In this document: positions 1,793 to 62,184 of the stretch, piece by piece
Layout: each line of letters opens with the position of its first letter
Numbering within the stretch: position 1 is the first letter of the stretch
Assembly (NCBI GenBank): GCA_021613535.1
Contig: CP075497.1
Location: 4,650,001 to 4,714,000, forward strand
Direction of reading: 5' to 3'
DNA length: 64,000 nt
Source: Adineta vaga
Taxonomy: Eukaryota > Animalia > Rotifera
Program-made: the position numbers and the translations under genes
Notes under the pieces: generated by a model
Databases searched by the model: none
What the model was told of the DNA's origin: nothing
The model's input: the letters and a program-made list of their open reading frames with translations, nothing else

Positions 1793-3221
1793 TTATTGTT
1801 TTTCATGAACAGCTTGTGCCATAAATAATTTCGCTAACCCTTGTGCTGCAAATTGTGTGATATTATCACATTGATTATTGATGTGAGAAGCATTGAGTAA
1901 TGCATTACGTCTTGATTGTGAATAACCTTTTGTCATACGATCGAAATCTTCTTCATTTCCATCATTGCGACGATTTGAATCACGTTGATTACGACGACTT
2001 TGTTGACGTTGAACTTGCTTTTGATAATTAGTATAACGCATTGCATCAGTGGCGAAATCATCAACACAATCAATTAATGTTCGAAGTTGACGTTCAAGAT
2101 TTCCGCTAGAACGAGAAAAAAACACATATACCAGTTTTGGAAAACAATTTCATATTATTTACCTTGTGCCTAAGTCAAGGAATGCGTTTGATTTTGAACT
2201 GAGTCTTGTTTGTTCATCAATTTCACAGAGAAGTGAATTGACTAAATGAGAATTTCTAAAGATAACTGGCAATTCTTCTAATAAACTTTCAAAATTCAAA
2301 TTAGCTTGACGTGCACTAAAAAGAAGAAAATAAATATTTTGATCATGAGTATGGAAATATAAAGTAGGTGATGAACTGAAGAATGTCAGGGTTTTCTTTT
2401 TACTAAAAAGCGTACACTATTAAGATACTTCAGTTTTATTCTTGAAATGAGTGTCGTTCACACTTTCGCTTCTTTATTTACTATCAATTCAAATGCATTT
2501 ATAATATTCTTTGAGATAGACTTACGTATCTGGTGAAAAATAATCTTCATTCTTTAGATTTTCAAGTGCAGCTGGTGTTAAACGAAAAGCTTTCAAACTA
2601 ATATAACCTTGCATAGCCAATGCTTGATCTACATATAATACAAACAAAAAGAAAAGCAAGTTAAGACGAGCATTCTGTTCAATATGTATCACTAACCATA
2701 AACAAGTGCAATAGATTCTTCAACACCGGATAATTGATAAGGTACCATTGATTGCGCAAGTGATCGATTAAAACTACTATCATAAAATCCCACCTGTAAA
2801 TAATCTGAATTGACTCGACGTAAATTTCGTATAATATCCGTTTGATATTGTTCGAAGTCTAGATAAAATTATTGTATATGTATTTATTTTTGTTTAAAAA
2901 AAGGTTTCGTTTTTACCAAGATCAAGATTTTCTGGTTTGTTTTGATTTGGAAATGGAAAACAATTGGTCACTTCAAGTGTAGAATCCTTAACCAAACCAA
3001 GAAGACCACCTTGTGCAGCATCCGTTGTTTCTTCATGTGCATGTTTAATGATTTTTAAGATGACCTATTGAAAAACATATTTACAATTCATATTAAAAAT
3101 CAATGATTTTTTTCTATACCATTGCATCGACATAAACATCTTTTACTGGATTTGATGTCGATGTCAGTGCAGCTGAACCAACTTTTGACGAATAATTCAT
3201 TTGTGAGCTGTTCGATGCCAT
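1793..3221 (-). CDS. EIF3H: Eukaryotic translation initiation factor 3 subunit H (MPN domain), multi-exon
   Basis: Spliced product MASNSSQ...VKDVYVDAM|[12 protein letters not shown]...[22 protein letters not shown]...ESIALVYD...KAFRLT...[24 protein letters not shown] matches eIF3h motifs. Confidence 0.92.
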
Positions 3222-3479: not shown

Positions 3480-6278
3480 ATGAATACTCAACATCTTCGG
3501 GATCAATATGTTCAACGACGATATCGAACGAATAATAATACTAATGCAAATTGTCAACGTCCTGATAAAAGACCTACAAAAGAAACACCTGAACAAGTAT
3601 TAAACGATCAATAGTTTACAAAAAAATAAAAAATAAATAAATGATTTTTATTTTGTTCAGATTATATGCGATCTTGTTCATCAATTTAATAACTATTGTG
3701 GTACTTTGCATAGTACACCAATGTATGATTTCGATTTAGATGAAGAAAAAAATCATCGTTGTAAGGTAGATTGATAGTTAATCATTGAAAAACAAATTCT
3801 TGTTTACTACTGATTTCTGTTATTTAATTAGATGACATTATCGATATTTCCTAATTTACAATCAATTGGTAACGGTGGTAAGACAAAAACTGAAGCAAAA
3901 GCTAATTCAATTATTGCATTTCTTGCTCATTTGGAAAAACGTAAACAAGTGGGATTATTTGTACCCTATGTGGTAAAGATCAATCTTTAATTTATTCACT
4001 TAAGAGAATGAGAGAATAGTTCTAATTTTCATTTGGATTAGATAAACGAATAATTGTAATTGATCAGAGATTGTCTGGTTTTTTTTGAATAAGTTTAAGA
4101 GGATCTGATTTAATCTATTTTTGATGATATTTCTTCAGAATCCAGCTTTATATCGTAATATTCAAGTTGAATTACGACGAGCATCTACGGCAACACCAGG
4201 TTTATTTCTATTTCTATATTTTTTTGCATTACACATCGACGTTCTATTATATTCAGATTTAACTATAAACGCAAACGAATATGCAATAGCCGATCGAATG
4301 ATATCGACACGTCAAGCAAAAAAAGACGAAAAACTTCTTTACATCATTCAACGAATCTGTGGTGCTCGTGTTGTAACATGTAGGTTTTGAAAGAGAGAGT
4401 AACACAATCATTCTTTAATAACGATTTCATTTTTTCAGTAAGTCAATCATCGAACATGACATTTATCTATTTCATTGGACCTAAATCAAAAGAACAATTA
4501 ATTCAAGTAAAACAAAAGAATAATTTCAGGAATAAAATCATTTTCTAAGTTGAGTTTTGTAGCCTTATGTAAAAGCATTATTTCAACCTGAAAGTGAACA
4601 AATGTTTAATTATGGTGAAAAATTATTTGATATATTTAGTGATGATAAATTTCTTGATAGTATTTGTCAACGTTTAAAAGTTCTATGTGATAATCATCTG
4701 GAAAAATGTAAATTATTTATTCGCGGAAGGTAAATTTCCAAACGAATCTTATTTTATTGATTAAAGTTTACTAAAACTTTCAGTTCTGTAAATGTTCAAT
4801 GTTGTTACAATGAATTTGTTACTTTACGTCGTGAATTCGAAAATGAATATCATCGACGTCGAAAAAATTCATGTTCAACATCAACTATATCTTTAAAACC
4901 ACATGAGATATTTGCTACGACTCAACTACTCGAATCAACACGTATTAATAACGAAGAAAAAGTACCTGTTGAAGAAGAAAAAACAGCTGATGTGGAAGAA
5001 AAAGCAACTGATGGAGAAGAGAAAGACAATAATCAATTACCAGATTATTCAATGTATAATGATGATGTTAATGCATCAATGTTGAAAGTACTACGACATG
5101 AAGAAGATTCAGAAGAACAAGCAATAAGTGAAGATGTAATCAAGTTTTTTTTTGAAATAACAAAAGTTTTCAATAGTATTGTTTAGACAACAATAACAAC
5201 AACAACGACAGCTTCTCCGATAGTTATCGAAGTTTCAGATGATTCATCAGAAAGTACAGATTTACAAGTCGTACAAACGATTCAACCTTCCACGCAAAAG
5301 AAACCAGTTCAAGTACAGCCACCCATTCAGTATGATTTTTCTCTCATTTATTCCTTTTTCATTTTTGTTTTTTCCCTAGAATTGAAACTACAACGCGACA
5401 AATCGCTGAGTAAAGTTCTCCTTTTTTGTATCTGTCTGTTTACGATTTTGAAACTATTCTTAGACCTCAAACTATTTGTCAAATTCCTCAATTACCACCA
5501 CCACCACCACCGTCATCAATAATAACATCTCAAACGAAAATTTTTCGTCATATTGTTTTAGATGGACAAAATATTGGTCGAAAGTAAATTTCTCACTTCA
5601 TTTCTATTCGATTCTAAATAATTTTTCATGATCTTGTTTCTTTTTATTAGTTCAAATGATTATCATCGTACATTTTCTTGGTCTCGTTTATGGAATGCAA
5701 TTAATTATTTCAAAAACCGAGGTCATGAAAATATTGTTGCTTTTCTACCTCTATGTATATTTAGTTTCTTAATGAATTTTCTGAAATAATTCAATTTGTT
5801 TTCGTAGATTATCGAGATTGTTCAAATAAAAACCTTCCGCCAATTGATGCCAATCGTGAACGCCAATTTCGTGATACGTTAATCAATTCACGTTATATTG
5901 CATTTACACCATCACGATATAACAATGGACAACGTTTAACAAATTATGATGATCGGTAAAATTATCATCGAATATAGAAAAATATCATAACTCTTCTTCT
6001 TCTTCTTTCTAATCTTTAATAGCTTTATTTTACAATATGCTTCTGATAACGATGGAATCGTTGTCAGTAATGATAATTTTCGTGATCTTCAACATGAAAC
6101 AGCTTTTCAATATGTGATAAACAATCGGTATAGAAATCTTTTCAATTTCATTCTTGATCGTTTTTCTTCTAGAATTTTACCGTTCGCAACGATCAATGAT
6201 ACATTTATGCCTGCTACAGATCCACTCGGTCGTAACGGTCCACATCTTGATCAATTCCTTATTAAAACAAATCTGTGA
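3480..6278 (+). CDS. N4BP1/KHNYN-family ribonuclease: dsRBD-like + di-KH-like + Zc3h12a-type NYN/PIN RNase, many exons
   Basis: C-terminal exons read RHIVLDGQNIG...YFKNRGH...FTPSR...NYDDRFILQYA...GIVVSNDNFRDL...ILPFATINDTFMPATDPLGRNGPHLDQFL (Regnase/N4BP1 NYN). The middle region YVKALFQPE...FLDSICQ...LFIRGS resembles the N4BP1 KH region. Exons 2-3 are dsRBD-like. Confidence 0.85.
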
Positions 6279-11136: not shown

Positions 11137-12126
11137 TTAAGTATGAGATGTAGTAGGGTGAAATGTACTATATGGAATTTGTGAGGCAATGAGTAATGCT
11201 TGTTCATTAAGAATTGATTTCCATTGTTTTTTAGATGTACTTTTTTGTGAAAATTTATTGATTGTTTGATCAATATTTATACCGAGAGATTGAGATATAT
11301 GTTGAATACTATGTGTAGTACGAGTAAGATTGATATTATCAGCAATAAGATAAGATTGAGACCATGGAATAATTCCTTGTATAGTTGAGTAACAAGTTGG
11401 ATCAATATAGATCGAGTAGATTGTTTTATGTTGAGAATGTAGTTTATTCAAAGATAGGATTAGAGTATTGATAGAATTGAAGATATGAATATGTTCATTG
11501 TTTATGATTAGTTTTTGTAATTGTTCGATAGTCATAGATGAAAGAGATTTTTTATGCTTTGTTGTTCGAAGAAAATTCAGAAGCGATTGTTGATCATTCC
11601 ACTTAAGTAAAACATATTGCTCTTCAACATAGTTCACTTGTGAAGTGTTCATTTGATCAGTAGATGTAAAATCGATCGTATCTGAATCAAAATTGACATG
11701 ACGTTCATGAAGAGAAGTTTTTGAGTATTGTTTTGATATCCTATCTTTAAATTAAGAATCTTCTATTTAGTTTCTATATTAAAAAAAAACATGTCAAAAG
11801 ATACTTGTGGAATCTACTTGTTCTTTCAAGTTCAACCACCAATATCCCAAACCATTTTTACATGAACATTTAGTGAGATGTAAATAACATTTTAAACAAT
11901 ACATTGGTGGATTATTGATAGAAGATTTTTCTAACTGAAAATATTTTGATTGAAATTGTTCATCTGCTTCAGTTGTTTTTTTATGATTCGATATAGCTTT
12001 ATTGAAACTAGAAGTAGATATATATGTCATATTATAAGATATTTGATATTTCTTTCGAATGAGTTGTTGTTCTTTTAACCATCGTTTACGATTTCGATGA
12101 ATATCTTTATAATCTTGATATGCCAT
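11137..12126 (-). CDS. Uncharacterised protein, probably 2 exons, with a CxxC-x6-CxC motif
   Basis: Two ORFs (110 and 171 aa) can be joined by a short intron at ~11745-11805. Contains YCLKCYLHLTKCSC. No recognised family. Confidence 0.5.
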
Positions 12127-27026: not shown

Positions 27027-28370
27027 ATGACTGATCAACGATGCATTGGAATAATTGGTTGTGGAAACATGGGTTTTGCTCTTGCTCGTCGCTTAACACT
27101 TTCAGGCTATACTGTTCTAATGGGTAGTCGAACTCCAAAAACTCAACGTCATGTTAACTTTGAAACAACTTCTATCATCGATTGCATTGAACGTACTTCA
27201 ATTATATTCGTCGCAATTCATCCTGAATATTATACAAATACACTCATCTCTCCTCTCGAAGATAATGCAACATTATTTGATGGAAAGATTTTAATAGATA
27301 TCTCAAATCATCTAAATAATCGATTGCAAGAAGATGAACTATCCAATGCAGAGTGTTTACAAACAGCTATTCCGAAAGCATACGTTGTCAAAGCATTCAA
27401 TACTATATCAGCATTTGTCATGGAAAGTACAACAGCTGGTGAATCTCGAATTGTTTTTGTAGCAAGTGATCATGCATTTGCAAGAGATAAAGTTATTAAT
27501 CTTGCACGAGAAATGAATTTTGATGGATTCAACAACGGTACACTTCGAACATCTCGACATTTAGAAAGTTACACACGATTTCTATTTCCTTTCTGGAGAA
27601 TACCTCTTATAATTACATTATGCGTTCTATCTTTATGGTCACTACTCACAATTTATAAGAAATTTATTAGTACAAAAACGACACTATGGCATCAATTATT
27701 TTTACATATGACAAATAAAGTTTTATGTACAAGTGCTATAACATTGTTAGCACTTGTTTATATGCCATCGAATTTAGCTTGTATATTTCAATTAGCATAT
27801 GGAACGAAGGATCGACGATTTCCTGCTTGGTTAGATAAATGGTTACTTTCTCGAAAACAACTTGGTTTATTGACATTTGCTGTTGGATTATTTCATGTAG
27901 TGATTACTTTAGTACTCATGTCACCTGCTTATTATACATCATGGTTTCATCCATCATCTGTTAGTGTTTCATCTGTTCAAAATGAAACAAAATTTCTTGT
28001 TCAACCAGGTTTAATGACATTCAAAGGTGAATTAGCATCGTTAATGGGTATTTTAACTATTCTTTCAATGTCATTATTGGCATTAGCAAGTATTCCAGCT
28101 ATTGGAAACTTGTTGAATTGGAGAGAATGGAGATTTGTACAGTCGAAATTGGGTACATTGACATTATTATTTGCAATTGGACATGTTCTTGCCATGGCAA
28201 CACCAGGTTGGGTACAAAAAAAATCTTGGAGCTCATTGTATTCAGTCGGATTTCTCTGTGTCGTATTTCCAGTGATCACAATTTTAATGAAATTTTTCTT
28301 TTGGTTACCTTGCTTGAGTCGTCCGATCGCTCGAATTCGTCGTGGAGAAGCTCGTAATCGAACAGTTTGA
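27027..28370 (+). CDS. STEAP: STEAP2/3/4-type metalloreductase (NADPH oxidoreductase + ferric reductase TM domain), intronless CDS
   Basis: Motifs GCGNMG Rossmann, GSR, DGKILIDISN, SNAE..Q, VVKAFNTISA, GTK.RRFP.WLDKWLLSRKQLGL and LNWREWRFVQSKLG; heme His residues present. Confidence 0.93.
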   Translation: MTDQRCIGIIGCGNMGFALARRLTLSGYTVLMGSRTPKTQRHVNFETTSIIDCIERTSIIFVAIHPEYYTNTLISPLEDNATLFDGKILIDISNHLNNRLQEDELSNAECLQTAIPKAYVVKAFNTISAFVMESTTAGESRIVFVASDHAFARDKVINLAREMNFDGFNNGTLRTSRHLESYTRFLFPFWRIPLIITLCVLSLWSLLTIYKKFISTKTTLWHQLFLHMTNKVLCTSAITLLALVYMPSNLACIFQLAYGTKDRRFPAWLDKWLLSRKQLGLLTFAVGLFHVVITLVLMSPAYYTSWFHPSSVSVSSVQNETKFLVQPGLMTFKGELASLMGILTILSMSLLALASIPAIGNLLNWREWRFVQSKLGTLTLLFAIGHVLAMATPGWVQKKSWSSLYSVGFLCVVFPVITILMKFFFWLPCLSRPIARIRRGEARNRTV

Positions 28371-35030: not shown

Positions 35031-36163
35031 ATGTTGAAAACAATTACTCATCGTTTTCTCCCGTTTACATATCGTCTATCACATCGATTGAATTCTACTA
35101 AATCTACCTGTGTCATACCGGGCGACGGTTCAGAATTACGTGGCGATGGAGCCATTCGTCGAAGTGAACTTTACGGTTCAACGATTGAACAAAGTTATGC
35201 TGGTGTTTTATCATTTCTTCGTCGAAATTATACTCGAAATTTAAAAGGTGTTGATGTAGCGGTTACAGGCATTCCATTAGATTTAGCTACAACATATCGA
35301 CCAGGTACTCGATTTGGTCCGAAAGGTATTCGTGAAGCATCTGTTCAATTTGCTGAATTAAAAAGTTATCCCGATGGACTTGAAATTTTCGAAGATTTAG
35401 CCGTTATTGATTATGGAGATTGTTGGTTTGACCAAGGTCAACCAAAAACTGTTCCACTTGCCATTCAAAATCACGCCAAAAAGATTATAGATAGAAATGT
35501 TTTTCTACTTTCATTAGGTTACTTATTTTCTTCAAAAAAAAATAAAAATTTTAAAATGATATATTCTATGTAGGTGGTGATCATTATATGACCTATCCAT
35601 TATTAAAAGCTCATGTTGCTCGACATGGAAAACCATTATCTCTCATACAATTCGATGCTCATTGTGATACATGGCCAGATCAACATTCGGACAGTTTAAA
35701 TCATGGTTCTATGTTTTATTATGCAGTCAATGAAGGACTCATTGATCCAAAAACATCGATTCAAATCGGTATTCGAACATACAATGATGATTTTATGGGT
35801 GTTAAAATTCTCGATGCAAATTGGGTTCATCGACATACAATCGAAGATGTTGTTGCAGAAATTCAAAATCGTGTTGGCGATACACCAACCTATTTAACTT
35901 TTGATATCGATTGTTTAGATCCAGCATTTGCACCGGGTACAGGTACTCCTGTATGTGGTGGATTAACAACAGCACAAGCACTTGCAATTATTCGTCAACT
36001 TAGATCCATTAATTATGTTGGAATGGATATTGTTGAAGTTTCTCCACCTTATGATCATGCAAATATAACAAGTTTAGCAGCAGCTACACTAGGATATGAA
36101 TTTTTAATTCTATTACGAAATAAAAAAATGATTGATAAATCATTTCAGTTCGGAAGTCAATGA
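35031..36163 (+). CDS. speB: Agmatinase (ureohydrolase) of proteobacterial type, with one intron (35518-35573) and an N-terminal transit-like peptide
   Basis: RPGTRFGP, LG|GDH, FDAHCDT, NHGS, GIRT, TFDIDCLDPAFAPGTGTP and DIVEVSPPYD are all intact. Confidence 0.92.
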
Positions 36164-60016: not shown

Positions 60017-62184
60017 TTAATCAACTTCTTCGATTGTTGGTCCTTTGGCGCCACCAGCTTTAGCTCCACCTTGGTTTGGCATACCACCAGCACCTGCAGC
60101 TCCAGCATCACCTCCTAGAATACAAATTATAGTAAGATTTCCTGAAATTTTATTCAATTTAAAATAACTTACCATAAAGTTTAGACATGACTGGTGAGCA
60201 GATTTTTTCAATTTCTTTAAGTTTATGATCGAATTCTTCTTTTTCGGCTAATTGATTAGTTTCCATCCATTTAAGTGCTGATTCAAGGGTCTCGTTGATT
60301 TTAGCTTTATCTTCAGCTGAAATTTTGGCGGCGATCTTGTCATCATTGATGCTTGTTTTCATGTTGAAGCAGTATGATTCAAGTGAATTCTTAGCTGAAA
60401 TACGTTCACGTTGAGCATCATCTTCTTTCTTGTATTTTTCGGCATCAGAAACCATTCTTTCGATATCATCTTTTGATAAGCGACCTTTGTCATTGGTGAT
60501 TGTGATTTTATTTTCACGACCAGTTGATTTATCAACAGCCGAGACGTTCAAAATACCGTTAGCATCAATATCGAATGTAACTTCAATTTGTGGTACACCA
60601 CGTGGAGCTGGTGGAATACCAGAAAGTTCGAAATTACCAAGTAAATGATTATCTCGTGTCATTGAACGTTCACCTTCATAAACTTTAATGTCAACACCAG
60701 GTTGATTATCTGAATATGTTGTAAATGTTTGAGTTTGTTTTGTTGGAATGGTTGTATTACGTTTGATTAAAGCTGTCATAACACCACCAGCAGTTTCAAT
60801 ACCCTAGGAAAAGTAAGAGAAATAGATAAAAACAAGTCTTTTTTCTTTTTTCGATTAACTTACCAATGAAAGTGGCGCAACATCGAGTAAAAGCACATCT
60901 TTAACTTCTTCGGATTTATCACCAGTTAAAATAGCGGCTTGAACAGCTGCACCATAAGCAACAGCTTCATCTGGATTGATGGATTTGTTCAATTCTTTTC
61001 CATTGAAGAAATCTTGAAGTAATTTTTGTACTTTTGGAATACGTGTTGAACCACCAACAAGTACAATTTCGTGAATACTTGCTTTATCCATTTTAGCATC
61101 ACGTAAAGCTTTTTCAACTGGTTCAAGTGTTGATCGGAAAAGATCAGCGCAGAGTTCTTCGAAACGAGCACGTGTAATTGTTGAATAGAAATCGATACCT
61201 TCATGAAGTGAATCGATTTCAATTGAAGCTTGTGATGATGATGACAAAGTACGCTAGAAGAAAAAGTTTCATTTGATTATTAATAAATATTAGAAATGAA
61301 TTTATTAACTTACTTTAGCACGTTCACAAGCTGTACGTAATCGACGAAGACCACGTTTGTTTTGTGATAAATCTTTGTTACTTTTACGTTTGAATTCTTG
61401 AACGAAATGTGTTACCATTCGGTTATCAAAATCTTCACCACCTAAATGTGTATCACCAGCTGTTGATTTGACTTCGAAGATACCTTCTTCAATTTTGAGT
61501 ACTGAGACATCGAAAGTACCACCACCCAAATCGAAGATGAGAATATTTCGTTCACCAGAAACTTTCTTATCTAAACCATAGGCAATAGCAGCAGCTGTTG
61601 GTTCATTAATAATACGTAAAACATTAAGGCCAGAAATAACACCGGCATCTTTTGTTGCTTGACGTTGTGAATCATTGAAATAAGCTGGAACAGTGATAAC
61701 AGCTTCAGAGATTTTTTTACCGAGATAAGCTTCAGCAATTTCTTTCATTTTTGTTAAAACCATTGATGAGATTTCTTCAGGGGTAAATGATTTGGTTTCA
61801 TTTTTATATTCAACTTGAATCTTTGGTTTAGTGGCCTCGTTAATAACTTTGAATGGCCAGTGTTTCATATCAGCTTGAACGGTGGCATCATCGAATTTAC
61901 GACCAATAAGTCGTTTAGCATCGAAGATGGTATTATTTGGATTCATAGCTACTTGATTTTTAGCAGCATCACCAATAAGACGTTCACTATCAGTGAATGC
62001 AACATAGGATGGTGTTGTTCGGTTACCTTGATCATTTGCAATAATTTCAACTTTACCATGTTGGAAGATACCAACGCACTAAAACAAATAATTATCGTTA
62101 AAATAACTTTCTTTTTTACTTATAAAACAATGTATAACTTACGGAGTACGTTGTGCCTAAATCAATACCAATAGCGCGAGCCAT
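60017..62184 (-). CDS. HSP70: Cytosolic HSP70/HSC70, 5 exons
   Basis: IDLGTTYS|[30 protein letters not shown] and C-terminal GPTIEEVD*. Confidence 0.98.

What the first reader, a model, noticed from the sequence alone, without database searches (positions are those of the whole stretch)
3480..6278. dsRBD + di-KH + NYN ribonuclease: candidate self-targeting dsRNA defence nuclease
Seen after manual splicing: exons 2-3 encode VHQFNNYCGTLHSTPMYDF...HRCKMTLSI...IGNGGKTKTEAKANSIIAFLAHL, which fits the alpha-beta-beta-beta-alpha dsRBD pattern with a GxGxSKKxA-like motif. A N4BP1-like KH region follows, then a NYN domain with the four catalytic Asp positions intact (LDGQN, YDDR, SND). The protein stops right after NYN, with no ubiquitin-binding CUBAN/CoCUN tail and no CCCH finger. 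Known: vertebrate N4BP1/KHNYN are antiviral RNases, KHNYN acting with ZAP, and I know of no dsRBD in them. Inference: a built-in dsRNA sensor could direct the nuclease to viral or transposon RNA without a separate adaptor. The ORF track misses this architecture.
Basis: partly seen in the sequence, partly recalled or inferred. Interest (0 to 1): 0.8.

Follow-up and report, generated by a model that had tools for sequence, protein, structure and literature searches.

The report
Rotifer RNA-cutter with duplex-binding head
Bdelloid rotifers have a conserved gene that puts a double-stranded-RNA-binding-type domain in front of a Regnase/N4BP1-family RNA-cutting enzyme, a combination I found described nowhere, which probably lets the enzyme find folded RNAs by itself, although a role in defence is untested.

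Summary
Real gene: window 3480-6278 (+), 15 exons, 629 aa. It is Adineta vaga I4U23_028716 (UJR35975.1), whose public model differs only by keeping the last 45-nt intron. Orthologues occur in A. ricciae, A. steineri and two Rotaria species. An intron-free contig from another species carries the matching exons in one ORF, so the 5' exons belong to the nuclease gene. Residues ~37-110 model as an alpha-beta-beta-beta-alpha dsRBD; best matches are DHX9/MLE dsRBD1 (Z 7.8-8.4). The loop His and two of three KKxAK lysines are invariant; the helix-1 Glu is absent. One type I KH fold without GxxG is supported; a second KH is likely but only weakly supported. The NYN keeps all five acidic residues and ends the protein. 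No dsRBD appeared in 104 other family proteins or in the papers searched. The defence role is untested. Family enzymes cut single strands, and this gene is single-copy, under purifying selection and head-to-head with eIF3h. RNA reads for A. vaga could not be checked. The scan had not noted this architecture elsewhere. Verdict: new variant of the N4BP1/Regnase family.

The parts
3480..6278 (+). Whole gene, 15 exons, 629 aa (A. vaga I4U23_028716 / UJR35975.1). Exons: 3480-3596, 3661-3765, 3832-3972, 4139-4199, 4257-4379, 4439-4506, 4563-4729, 4784-5135, 5187-5329, 5380-5409, 5464-5583, 5651-5754, 5808-5955, 6023-6127, 6173-6278
   Evidence: orthologous exons in the same order in L030/L031; intron-free orthologue contig L036
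3480..3596 (+). Exon 1: Arg/Asn-rich, poorly conserved N-terminal arm (aa 1-39)
   Evidence: 22-56% identity to orthologues
3661..3972 (+). dsRBD fold (aa ~37-110) on exons 2-3, bounded by phase-0 introns. Invariant His71 (3754-3756), Lys93 (3886-3888), Lys97 (3898-3900); nearly invariant basic extension after helix 2 (aa 109-119)
   Evidence: AF2 model H-E-E-E-H, pLDDT ~65-82; Foldseek 1whq prob 1.00 and 6i3r 0.99; VIA Z 8.4 MLE, 7.8 DHX9; profile hits DHX9 E 0.036 and TRBP; Dicer_dimer E 3e-4 to 0.064 in all six
3973..4138 (+). Longest intron (166 nt, phase 0), separating the dsRBD from the rest. About 55 nt in L030; about 4.1 kb with a nested opposite-strand gene in Rotaria sordida
4257..4589 (+). 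KH1, type I fold, no GxxG (aa ~148-214)
   Evidence: model E-H-H-E-E-H, pLDDT ~70-85; KH hits Z 6-7.4 incl. N4BP1 6q3v Z 6.4-6.7 and KHNYN 9hts Z 5.9
4590..4841 (+). Highly conserved block (aa ~215-280), probable second KH
   Evidence: 64-87% identity to orthologues; in-register profile match to invertebrate N4BP1/Regnase di-KH, pairwise E 0.006-0.008, but 3 of 60 shuffles scored as high; model low-confidence and helical
4842..5542 (+). Acidic, low-complexity linker (aa ~281-462) with two conserved islands: a D-Y-S-x-Y-x-D-D-V-N helix-like motif, and a V/I-I-E-V-S-D-D-S motif at 5217-5249 that resembles a SUMO-interaction motif (resemblance from memory, untested)
5543..6275 (+). Zc3h12a-type NYN/PIN ribonuclease (aa 463-629). 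Acidic site D469 (5561), D558/D559 (5948-5953), D577 (6072), D581 (6084)
   Evidence: Regnase-1 site D141/D225/D226/D244/D248 from PMC5499597
3222..3479 (.). 258-bp head-to-head spacer shared with the eIF3h gene (ORF starts at 3221 on the - strand); arrangement kept in orthologous loci

Best explanation
This is a bdelloid-specific member of the N4BP1/KHNYN/Regnase (Zc3h12a-type NYN) endoribonuclease family that gained an N-terminal dsRBD and has no ubiquitin-binding tail. Most likely the dsRBD grips A-form RNA stems without sequence specificity. The long acidic linker lets the metal-dependent NYN reach and cut single-stranded RNA next to the stem, and the GxxG-less KH region docks protein partners of RNA decay. 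Its everyday job would be turnover or quality control of folded RNAs, taking over the stem-loop targeting that Regnase-1 gets from its zinc finger and partner proteins; foreign duplex-bearing RNA could be among its substrates. Shown: gene model, single transcript in an orthologue, domain folds (predicted), intact active site, conservation. Inferred: catalysis, RNA binding by the dsRBD, partner docking by KH, targets.
For: The dsRBD aligns without gaps to TRBP dsRBD1 over 61 columns and to a canonical dsRBD of the same genome over 45 columns, with His71 on the loop His and K93/K97 on the first and last Lys of KKxAK. His71, K93 and K97 are invariant in all seven aligned sequences. Best structural neighbours are RNA-binding dsRBDs of DHX9/MLE, and DHX9 dsRBD1 also lacks the helix-1 Glu. 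Five acidic NYN residues are intact. KHNYN PIN is a single-strand endonuclease (PMC12709174). N4BP1/KHNYN KH pairs lack GxxG or RNA binding and dock proteins such as EDC4 (PMC11997328, PMC13586276). Rough dN/dS is about 0.08-0.2 in dsRBD and NYN and 0.11-0.33 in KH, against 0.09-0.18 for the neighbouring Vps33 exon. Single copy; head-to-head with eIF3h. The two CCCH-type Regnase genes of this genome have lost their catalytic Asp motifs, so they cannot do the cutting themselves.
Against: No biochemical or expression data. The helix-1 Glu and the G-P of the GPxH loop are missing, the loop is acidic in A. vaga, and the middle Lys is Thr or Gln in Adineta; the A. vaga domain has no net positive charge (10 K/R against 10 D/E). 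The only Pfam hit is Dicer_dimer, a dsRBD-fold family used for protein contacts (function from my own knowledge), and protein-binding dsRBDs (TRBP3, Loqs3, Staufen5) tie within about 1 Z of the top. Models rest on 9-13 close sequences (mean pLDDT 58-62).
Confidence: 0.45

Rival explanations
1. The dsRBD fold is a protein-docking module that plugs the nuclease into the small-RNA machinery (Dicer, a dsRBD partner, Argonaute/RdRP). The enzyme then cuts targeted RNAs to seed RdRP amplification, as RDE-8 does in C. elegans, perhaps paired with an inactive Regnase.
For: Dicer_dimer is the only Pfam match. Incomplete RNA-binding signature. Bdelloids average 38.9 RdRP and 21.5 Argonaute copies (PMC7943196). 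Nematode Regnase-family nucleases act in RNAi as active-inactive pairs (10.64898/2026.09.04.749402), and this genome has two catalytically degenerate Regnase genes.
Against: The loop His and two lysines are invariant, which docking-only dsRBDs usually lose (own knowledge). No sequence link to RDE-8 was tested or seen. No genomic linkage to RNAi genes among the neighbours.
Confidence: 0.25
2. One reading: a dedicated, self-targeting defence nuclease that senses viral or transposon dsRNA with its own dsRBD and destroys that RNA without an adaptor such as ZAP.
For: Human N4BP1, KHNYN and Regnases restrict RNA viruses. The dsRBD is most like DHX9/MLE dsRBD1. Bdelloids have expanded transposon-silencing pathways.
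Against: Single copy, purifying selection similar to the neighbouring housekeeping gene, conserved position beside eIF3h; none of this excludes defence, but there is no arms-race signal. A single dsRBD binds weakly and cannot tell self from foreign stems (own knowledge). No induction data were found.
Confidence: 0.2
3. The dsRBD exons are a separate small gene, and the fusion is an annotation artefact.
For: Some R. sordida assemblies annotate a separate 126-aa 'DRBM domain-containing protein' (P0167) and an N-terminally short NYN protein. No A. vaga reads could be laid.
Against: The intron-free contig SRR22100207_1025 carries the matching exons abutting in one 550-aa ORF. L030 has a ~55-nt intron at this point. 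The R. sordida split coincides with a ~4.1-kb intron holding a nested gene, and other R. sordida models are full length (606 aa).
Confidence: 0.03

Closest known systems
N4BP1 / KHNYN (vertebrates; N4BP1-like in molluscs, echinoderms, lancelets)
   Same: GxxG-less type I KH region near the N-terminus, long disordered linker, Zc3h12a-type NYN with intact acidic site, no CCCH finger.
   Different: Extra N-terminal dsRBD; no CUBAN/CoCUN tail (ancestral in N4BP1-like proteins, PMC9888277) and no UBA-like hit; KH region not recognised by the KH_N4BP1 Pfam models; NYN not nested with N4BP1 in the tree, though that grouping is not rejected (p-AU 0.265).
Regnase-1 to -4 (ZC3H12A-D) and invertebrate KH-bearing Regnase-like proteins (Saccoglossus, Varroa, Sinanodonta)
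   Same: NYN matches ZC3H12A/B/C at E ~1e-30, about equal to KHNYN at E ~3e-29; all five acidic residues; several invertebrate Regnases carry the same kind of di-KH head.
   Different: No UBA before the NYN, no CCCH finger, no C-terminal Regnase domain; has a dsRBD.
C. elegans RDE-8 / NYN-1 / ERI-9
   Same: Regnase-family NYN nuclease in an animal with RdRP-amplified RNAi; inactive paralogues present in the same genome.
   Different: No sequence relationship tested; no evidence of a CPUG-like complex; dsRBD/KH head not reported in the section read.
DHX9 / MLE dsRBD1, TRBP dsRBD1, Dicer DUF283 (PF03368)
   Same: alpha-beta-beta-beta-alpha fold; aromatic-Cys in helix 1 like DHX9; loop His and K-x-x-A-K in register.
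   Different: 14-23% identity only; below the Pfam dsrm and Dicer_dimer cut-offs; single copy, fused to a PIN-type nuclease instead of a helicase or RNase III.

Membership tests
RNase_Zc3h12a NYN (PF11977) | Pfam score over the curated cut-off | tested here: met
   115 bits against cut-off 23 for P0158; 131 bits for P0011
RNase_Zc3h12a NYN (PF11977) | Acidic active site D141/D225/D226/D244/D248 of Regnase-1 | tested here: met
   D469, D558, D559, D577, D581 (PMC5499597)
RNase_Zc3h12a NYN (PF11977) | Metal-dependent RNA cleavage | not testable with these tools
   needs an in vitro assay
dsRBD | alpha-beta-beta-beta-alpha fold | tested here: met
   predicted model and fold searches
dsRBD | Pfam dsrm (PF00035) match | tested here: not met
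   no dsrm hit at E up to 10; Dicer_dimer best 21.2 bits, below cut-off 23.7
dsRBD | RNA-contact regions: helix-1 Glu, loop His, KKxAK | tested here: inconclusive
   Glu absent; His invariant; K93 and K97 invariant, middle Lys only outside Adineta
N4BP1/KHNYN subfamily | First type I KH without GxxG | tested here: met
   fold level only; Pfam KH_N4BP1_1st not hit
N4BP1/KHNYN subfamily | Second KH and helical bundle (extended di-KH) | tested here: inconclusive
   weak in-register profile match; not folded as KH by AF2
N4BP1/KHNYN subfamily | C-terminal CUBAN/CoCUN domain | tested here: not met
   stop directly after NYN in six proteins; no PF23054 hit
N4BP1/KHNYN subfamily | NYN groups with N4BP1 in a tree | tested here: inconclusive
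   own clade 100/100 on a 0.95 stem, sister unresolved; p-AU 0.265 for grouping with N4BP1-type rows
Regnase (ZC3H12) subfamily | CCCH finger after the NYN, UBA before it | tested here: not met

The most novel reading that the evidence does not exclude
Bdelloids built a one-chain duplex-RNA sensor plus nuclease: a Dicer-independent and adaptor-independent RNase that recognises viral or transposon dsRNA directly and either destroys the flanking strands or makes the cut ends that feed their uniquely expanded RdRP system. I found no Regnase-family enzyme described as aimed by its own dsRBD.
Probability: 0.25. Interest if true: 0.75.

Novelty: new variant of a known kind. Interest (0 to 1): 0.5.

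Why it matters
How N4BP1/Regnase-family nucleases choose targets is a live question: KHNYN needs ZAP, and its KH pair does not bind RNA. A natural family member with a built-in duplex-binding fold is a simple test of whether the nuclease can be aimed in cis by one RNA-binding module. It is also a concrete candidate for the unknown nuclease step in bdelloid RNA silencing, in an animal whose CCCH-type Regnases appear catalytically dead. The parts are all known; the combination and the lineage are what is new.

Tried and rejected
The joined model was built only inside a script to check the frame and was never sent to a search tool; searches went exon by exon by reference, then by database protein id. 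Exon 3 alone gave nothing in Pfam, PDB sequences or the Atlas, and the Atlas feature search of aa 35-290 was blank. An extra micro-exon in the 166-nt intron was considered and rejected: the orthologue has a plain ~55-nt intron and the public models have no such exon. The retained last intron of UJR35975.1 was rejected as a likely annotation slip (absent in five orthologues). No homoeologous copy was found in the own genome (these searches give lower bounds). Gene id 028716 was not found in the supplements of two A. vaga transcriptome papers; they may use other ids, so this says nothing about expression. Direct sequence hits from the KH region to N4BP1/KHNYN in PDB were not obtained; the frog RNase and phospholipase hits there look like Cys-pattern noise. 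A by-eye likeness of aa 205-265 to the N4BP1 KH1-KH2 sequence printed was not scored, because that sequence has no reference id. Three of four AU tests did not finish. The CCCH labels were wrong (bad pattern) and were not used. Paper searches found no dsRBD plus NYN description.

Full report
Source and gene model. The window is C6:4,650,001-4,714,000 of a 100.8-Mb, six-contig genome. Splicing at GT-AG sites gives a 15-exon open frame from 3480 to 6278, 629 aa. I built this joined model only inside a script to check the frame. The last two exons led to a full-length relative, P0011, and from it to five named proteins: Adineta vaga I4U23_028716 (UJR35975.1, on a contig of the same length as C6), A. 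ricciae, A. steineri, Rotaria sordida and R. magnacalcarata. UJR35975.1 contains each of the 14 exons tested letter for letter, with the 30-nt exon 10 between them, and differs only by reading through the last 45-nt intron, which the five orthologues lack.

One transcript. In an orthologue it is: contig SRR22100207_1025 (L036, 1736 nt) has the 14 exons tested abutting, with no introns, in one 550-aa ORF from the dsRBD exons to the NYN. The library type and species of that run are not given; an intron-free copy is what a transcript would give. Genomic orthologues L030/L031 hold the same exons in the same order with the same intron positions, between eIF3h and a Sec1/Vps33-like gene. In some R. 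sordida assemblies the gene is annotated in two pieces, the first named 'DRBM domain-containing protein' by UniRef. The split falls at an intron that has grown to about 4.1 kb and holds a nested gene on the other strand; other R. sordida models are full length.

The N-terminal domain. Pfam dsrm does not match. The dsRBD-fold family Dicer_dimer matches weakly in all six orthologues (E 3e-4 to 0.064, below cut-off). A profile of the domain ranks DHX9 dsRBD1 (E 0.036) and TRBP dsRBDs at the top of PDB sequences. AlphaFold2 gives helix-strand-strand-strand-helix at aa 37-110 with pLDDT about 65-82. Foldseek ranks DHX9 dsRBD1 (prob 1.00) and MLE dsRBDs (0.99) first; VIA-align ranks MLE (Z 8.4, 2.5 A over 78) and DHX9 (Z 7.8) first, with many more dsRBDs at Z 6-7.5. 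Each score is middling, but three kinds of evidence agree. For RNA binding the signs are mixed. Gap-free alignments to TRBP dsRBD1 and to a canonical dsRBD of the same genome put His71 on the loop His and Lys93/Lys97 on the first and last Lys of KKxAK; all three are invariant. The middle Lys is kept in Rotaria and P0011 but is Thr or Gln in Adineta. The helix-1 Glu and the G-P of the loop are missing, as they also are in DHX9 dsRBD1. The two dsRBD exons sit between phase-0 introns, which would allow exon shuffling but does not show it.

The KH region. aa 148-214 models as a type I KH without GxxG in both predictions. It matches KH domains generally, with N4BP1 (Z 6.4-6.7) and KHNYN (Z 5.9, 21% identity) among them but not above them. 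aa 215-290 is the most conserved non-catalytic block but was modelled with low confidence as helices. A profile of six invertebrate di-KH heads, itself a firm match to human N4BP1 (E 1.9e-11), aligns in register over both halves (107 columns, pairwise E 0.0076). It also ranks the bdelloid proteins directly below true members among 175 proteins. However, 3 of 60 shuffles scored as high. A second KH is likely from context but not established. Those six heads include Regnase-type proteins from Saccoglossus, Varroa and Sinanodonta, so di-KH does not single out N4BP1.

The nuclease. PF11977 scores 115 bits, and ZC3H12A/B/C and KHNYN match about equally (E 5e-31 to 5e-29). D469, D558, D559, D577 and D581 correspond to the five Regnase-1 acidic residues listed in PMC5499597. 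The protein ends there in all six full-length sequences, with no CCCH, UBA or CUBAN/CoCUN, although a CUBAN-like tail is ancestral in N4BP1-like proteins (PMC9888277). In trees the six bdelloid NYNs form one clade (100/100) on a long stem outside the Regnase crown with no supported sister; grouping with N4BP1-type rows is not rejected (p-AU 0.265). It is a member of the Zc3h12a NYN family, but I do not file it as an N4BP1 orthologue.

Spread and novelty. Word searches with the N-terminal 300 residues and with the full alignment returned only these six proteins. That tool misses distant kin: it did not return Regnases either. Among 104 other family proteins of 300 aa or more from the exhaustive NYN search, none had a dsrm or Dicer_dimer hit, and none matched the bdelloid dsRBD profile. 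This is a sample (the best 150 of 492 hits), not a census. Paper searches found no dsRBD plus NYN protein and no rotifer N4BP1/Regnase study. The scan's own notes hold no such architecture. Monogonont rotifers were not tested.

How it likely works. KHNYN's PIN is a Mn-dependent single-strand endonuclease (PMC12709174), and Regnase-1 prefers stem-loop substrates (PMC5499597). The KH pairs of KHNYN and N4BP1 show no RNA binding or lack GxxG, and N4BP1's dock EDC4 (PMC11997328, PMC13586276). The simplest reading is an enzyme anchored to an RNA stem by the dsRBD, cutting nearby single strands through a roughly 180-aa flexible linker, with KH as a protein dock (0.45). The gene is single-copy. It is under purifying selection similar to its Vps33-like neighbour (rough dN/dS 0.08-0.2 in dsRBD and NYN, 0.11-0.33 in KH, with dS near saturation). 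It lies head-to-head with eIF3h across 258 bp here and about 300 bp in R. sordida. These fit a constitutive role and give no arms-race signal, but do not exclude defence (0.2). The second rival is docking to small-RNA machinery, RDE-8-style (0.25). Bdelloids have about 39 RdRP copies (PMC7943196), nematode Regnases work in RNAi as active-inactive pairs, and the two CCCH-type Regnases of this genome have lost the YDD and SND motifs.

Verdict. It is a new variant of a known family, built from known parts, with function untested. Interest 0.5.

Noticed in passing
L008:4860-5500 (G000:C6 ~8.652 Mb, +) and L009 (G000:C3 ~7.774 Mb, -): A pair of UBA-NYN-CCCH Regnase-type genes in which the YDD and SND catalytic motifs are replaced (YTH, TNV): predicted pseudonucleases. 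L008 also shows an apparent frameshift at the first NYN Asp motif relative to L009 (assembly error or decay).
   Followed up: partly
L007:3957-5497 (G000:C2 ~1.7725-1.7740 Mb, +): A second, shorter Zc3h12a-type NYN gene with intact DG, YDD and SND motifs that ends at the NYN. Its N-terminal ~140 aa look by eye like a di-KH pattern, but no profile matched.
   Followed up: partly
window 11137-12084 (-); L044:7380-8336: A gene lying about 5 kb downstream in A. vaga has a homologue (70% DNA identity over 947 nt) nested inside the dsRBD-KH intron of this gene in Rotaria sordida: a local gene relocation.
   Followed up: partly
P0119, P0027, P0153, P0140: Invertebrate Regnase-type proteins (hemichordate, mite, mussel) carry an N4BP1-like di-KH head, suggesting di-KH is ancestral to both N4BP1 and Regnase.
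   Followed up: partly
P0107, P0121: Unnamed metagenome proteins with FHA plus NYN and UIM/chromo plus NYN architectures, both ending at the NYN; they branch near the bdelloid clade without support.
   Followed up: no
L034:1440-2300: An insertion of about 850 nt with repeat-like ends in the intron inside the NYN of one orthologue, probably a small non-autonomous transposon.
   Followed up: no
window 27027-28370 (+), 35031-36163 (+), 60159-61946 (-): Other genes seen in the ORF list, named by eye from the translations: an intronless STEAP-like oxidoreductase, an agmatinase-like gene (already noted by the scan) and an Hsp70.
   Followed up: no
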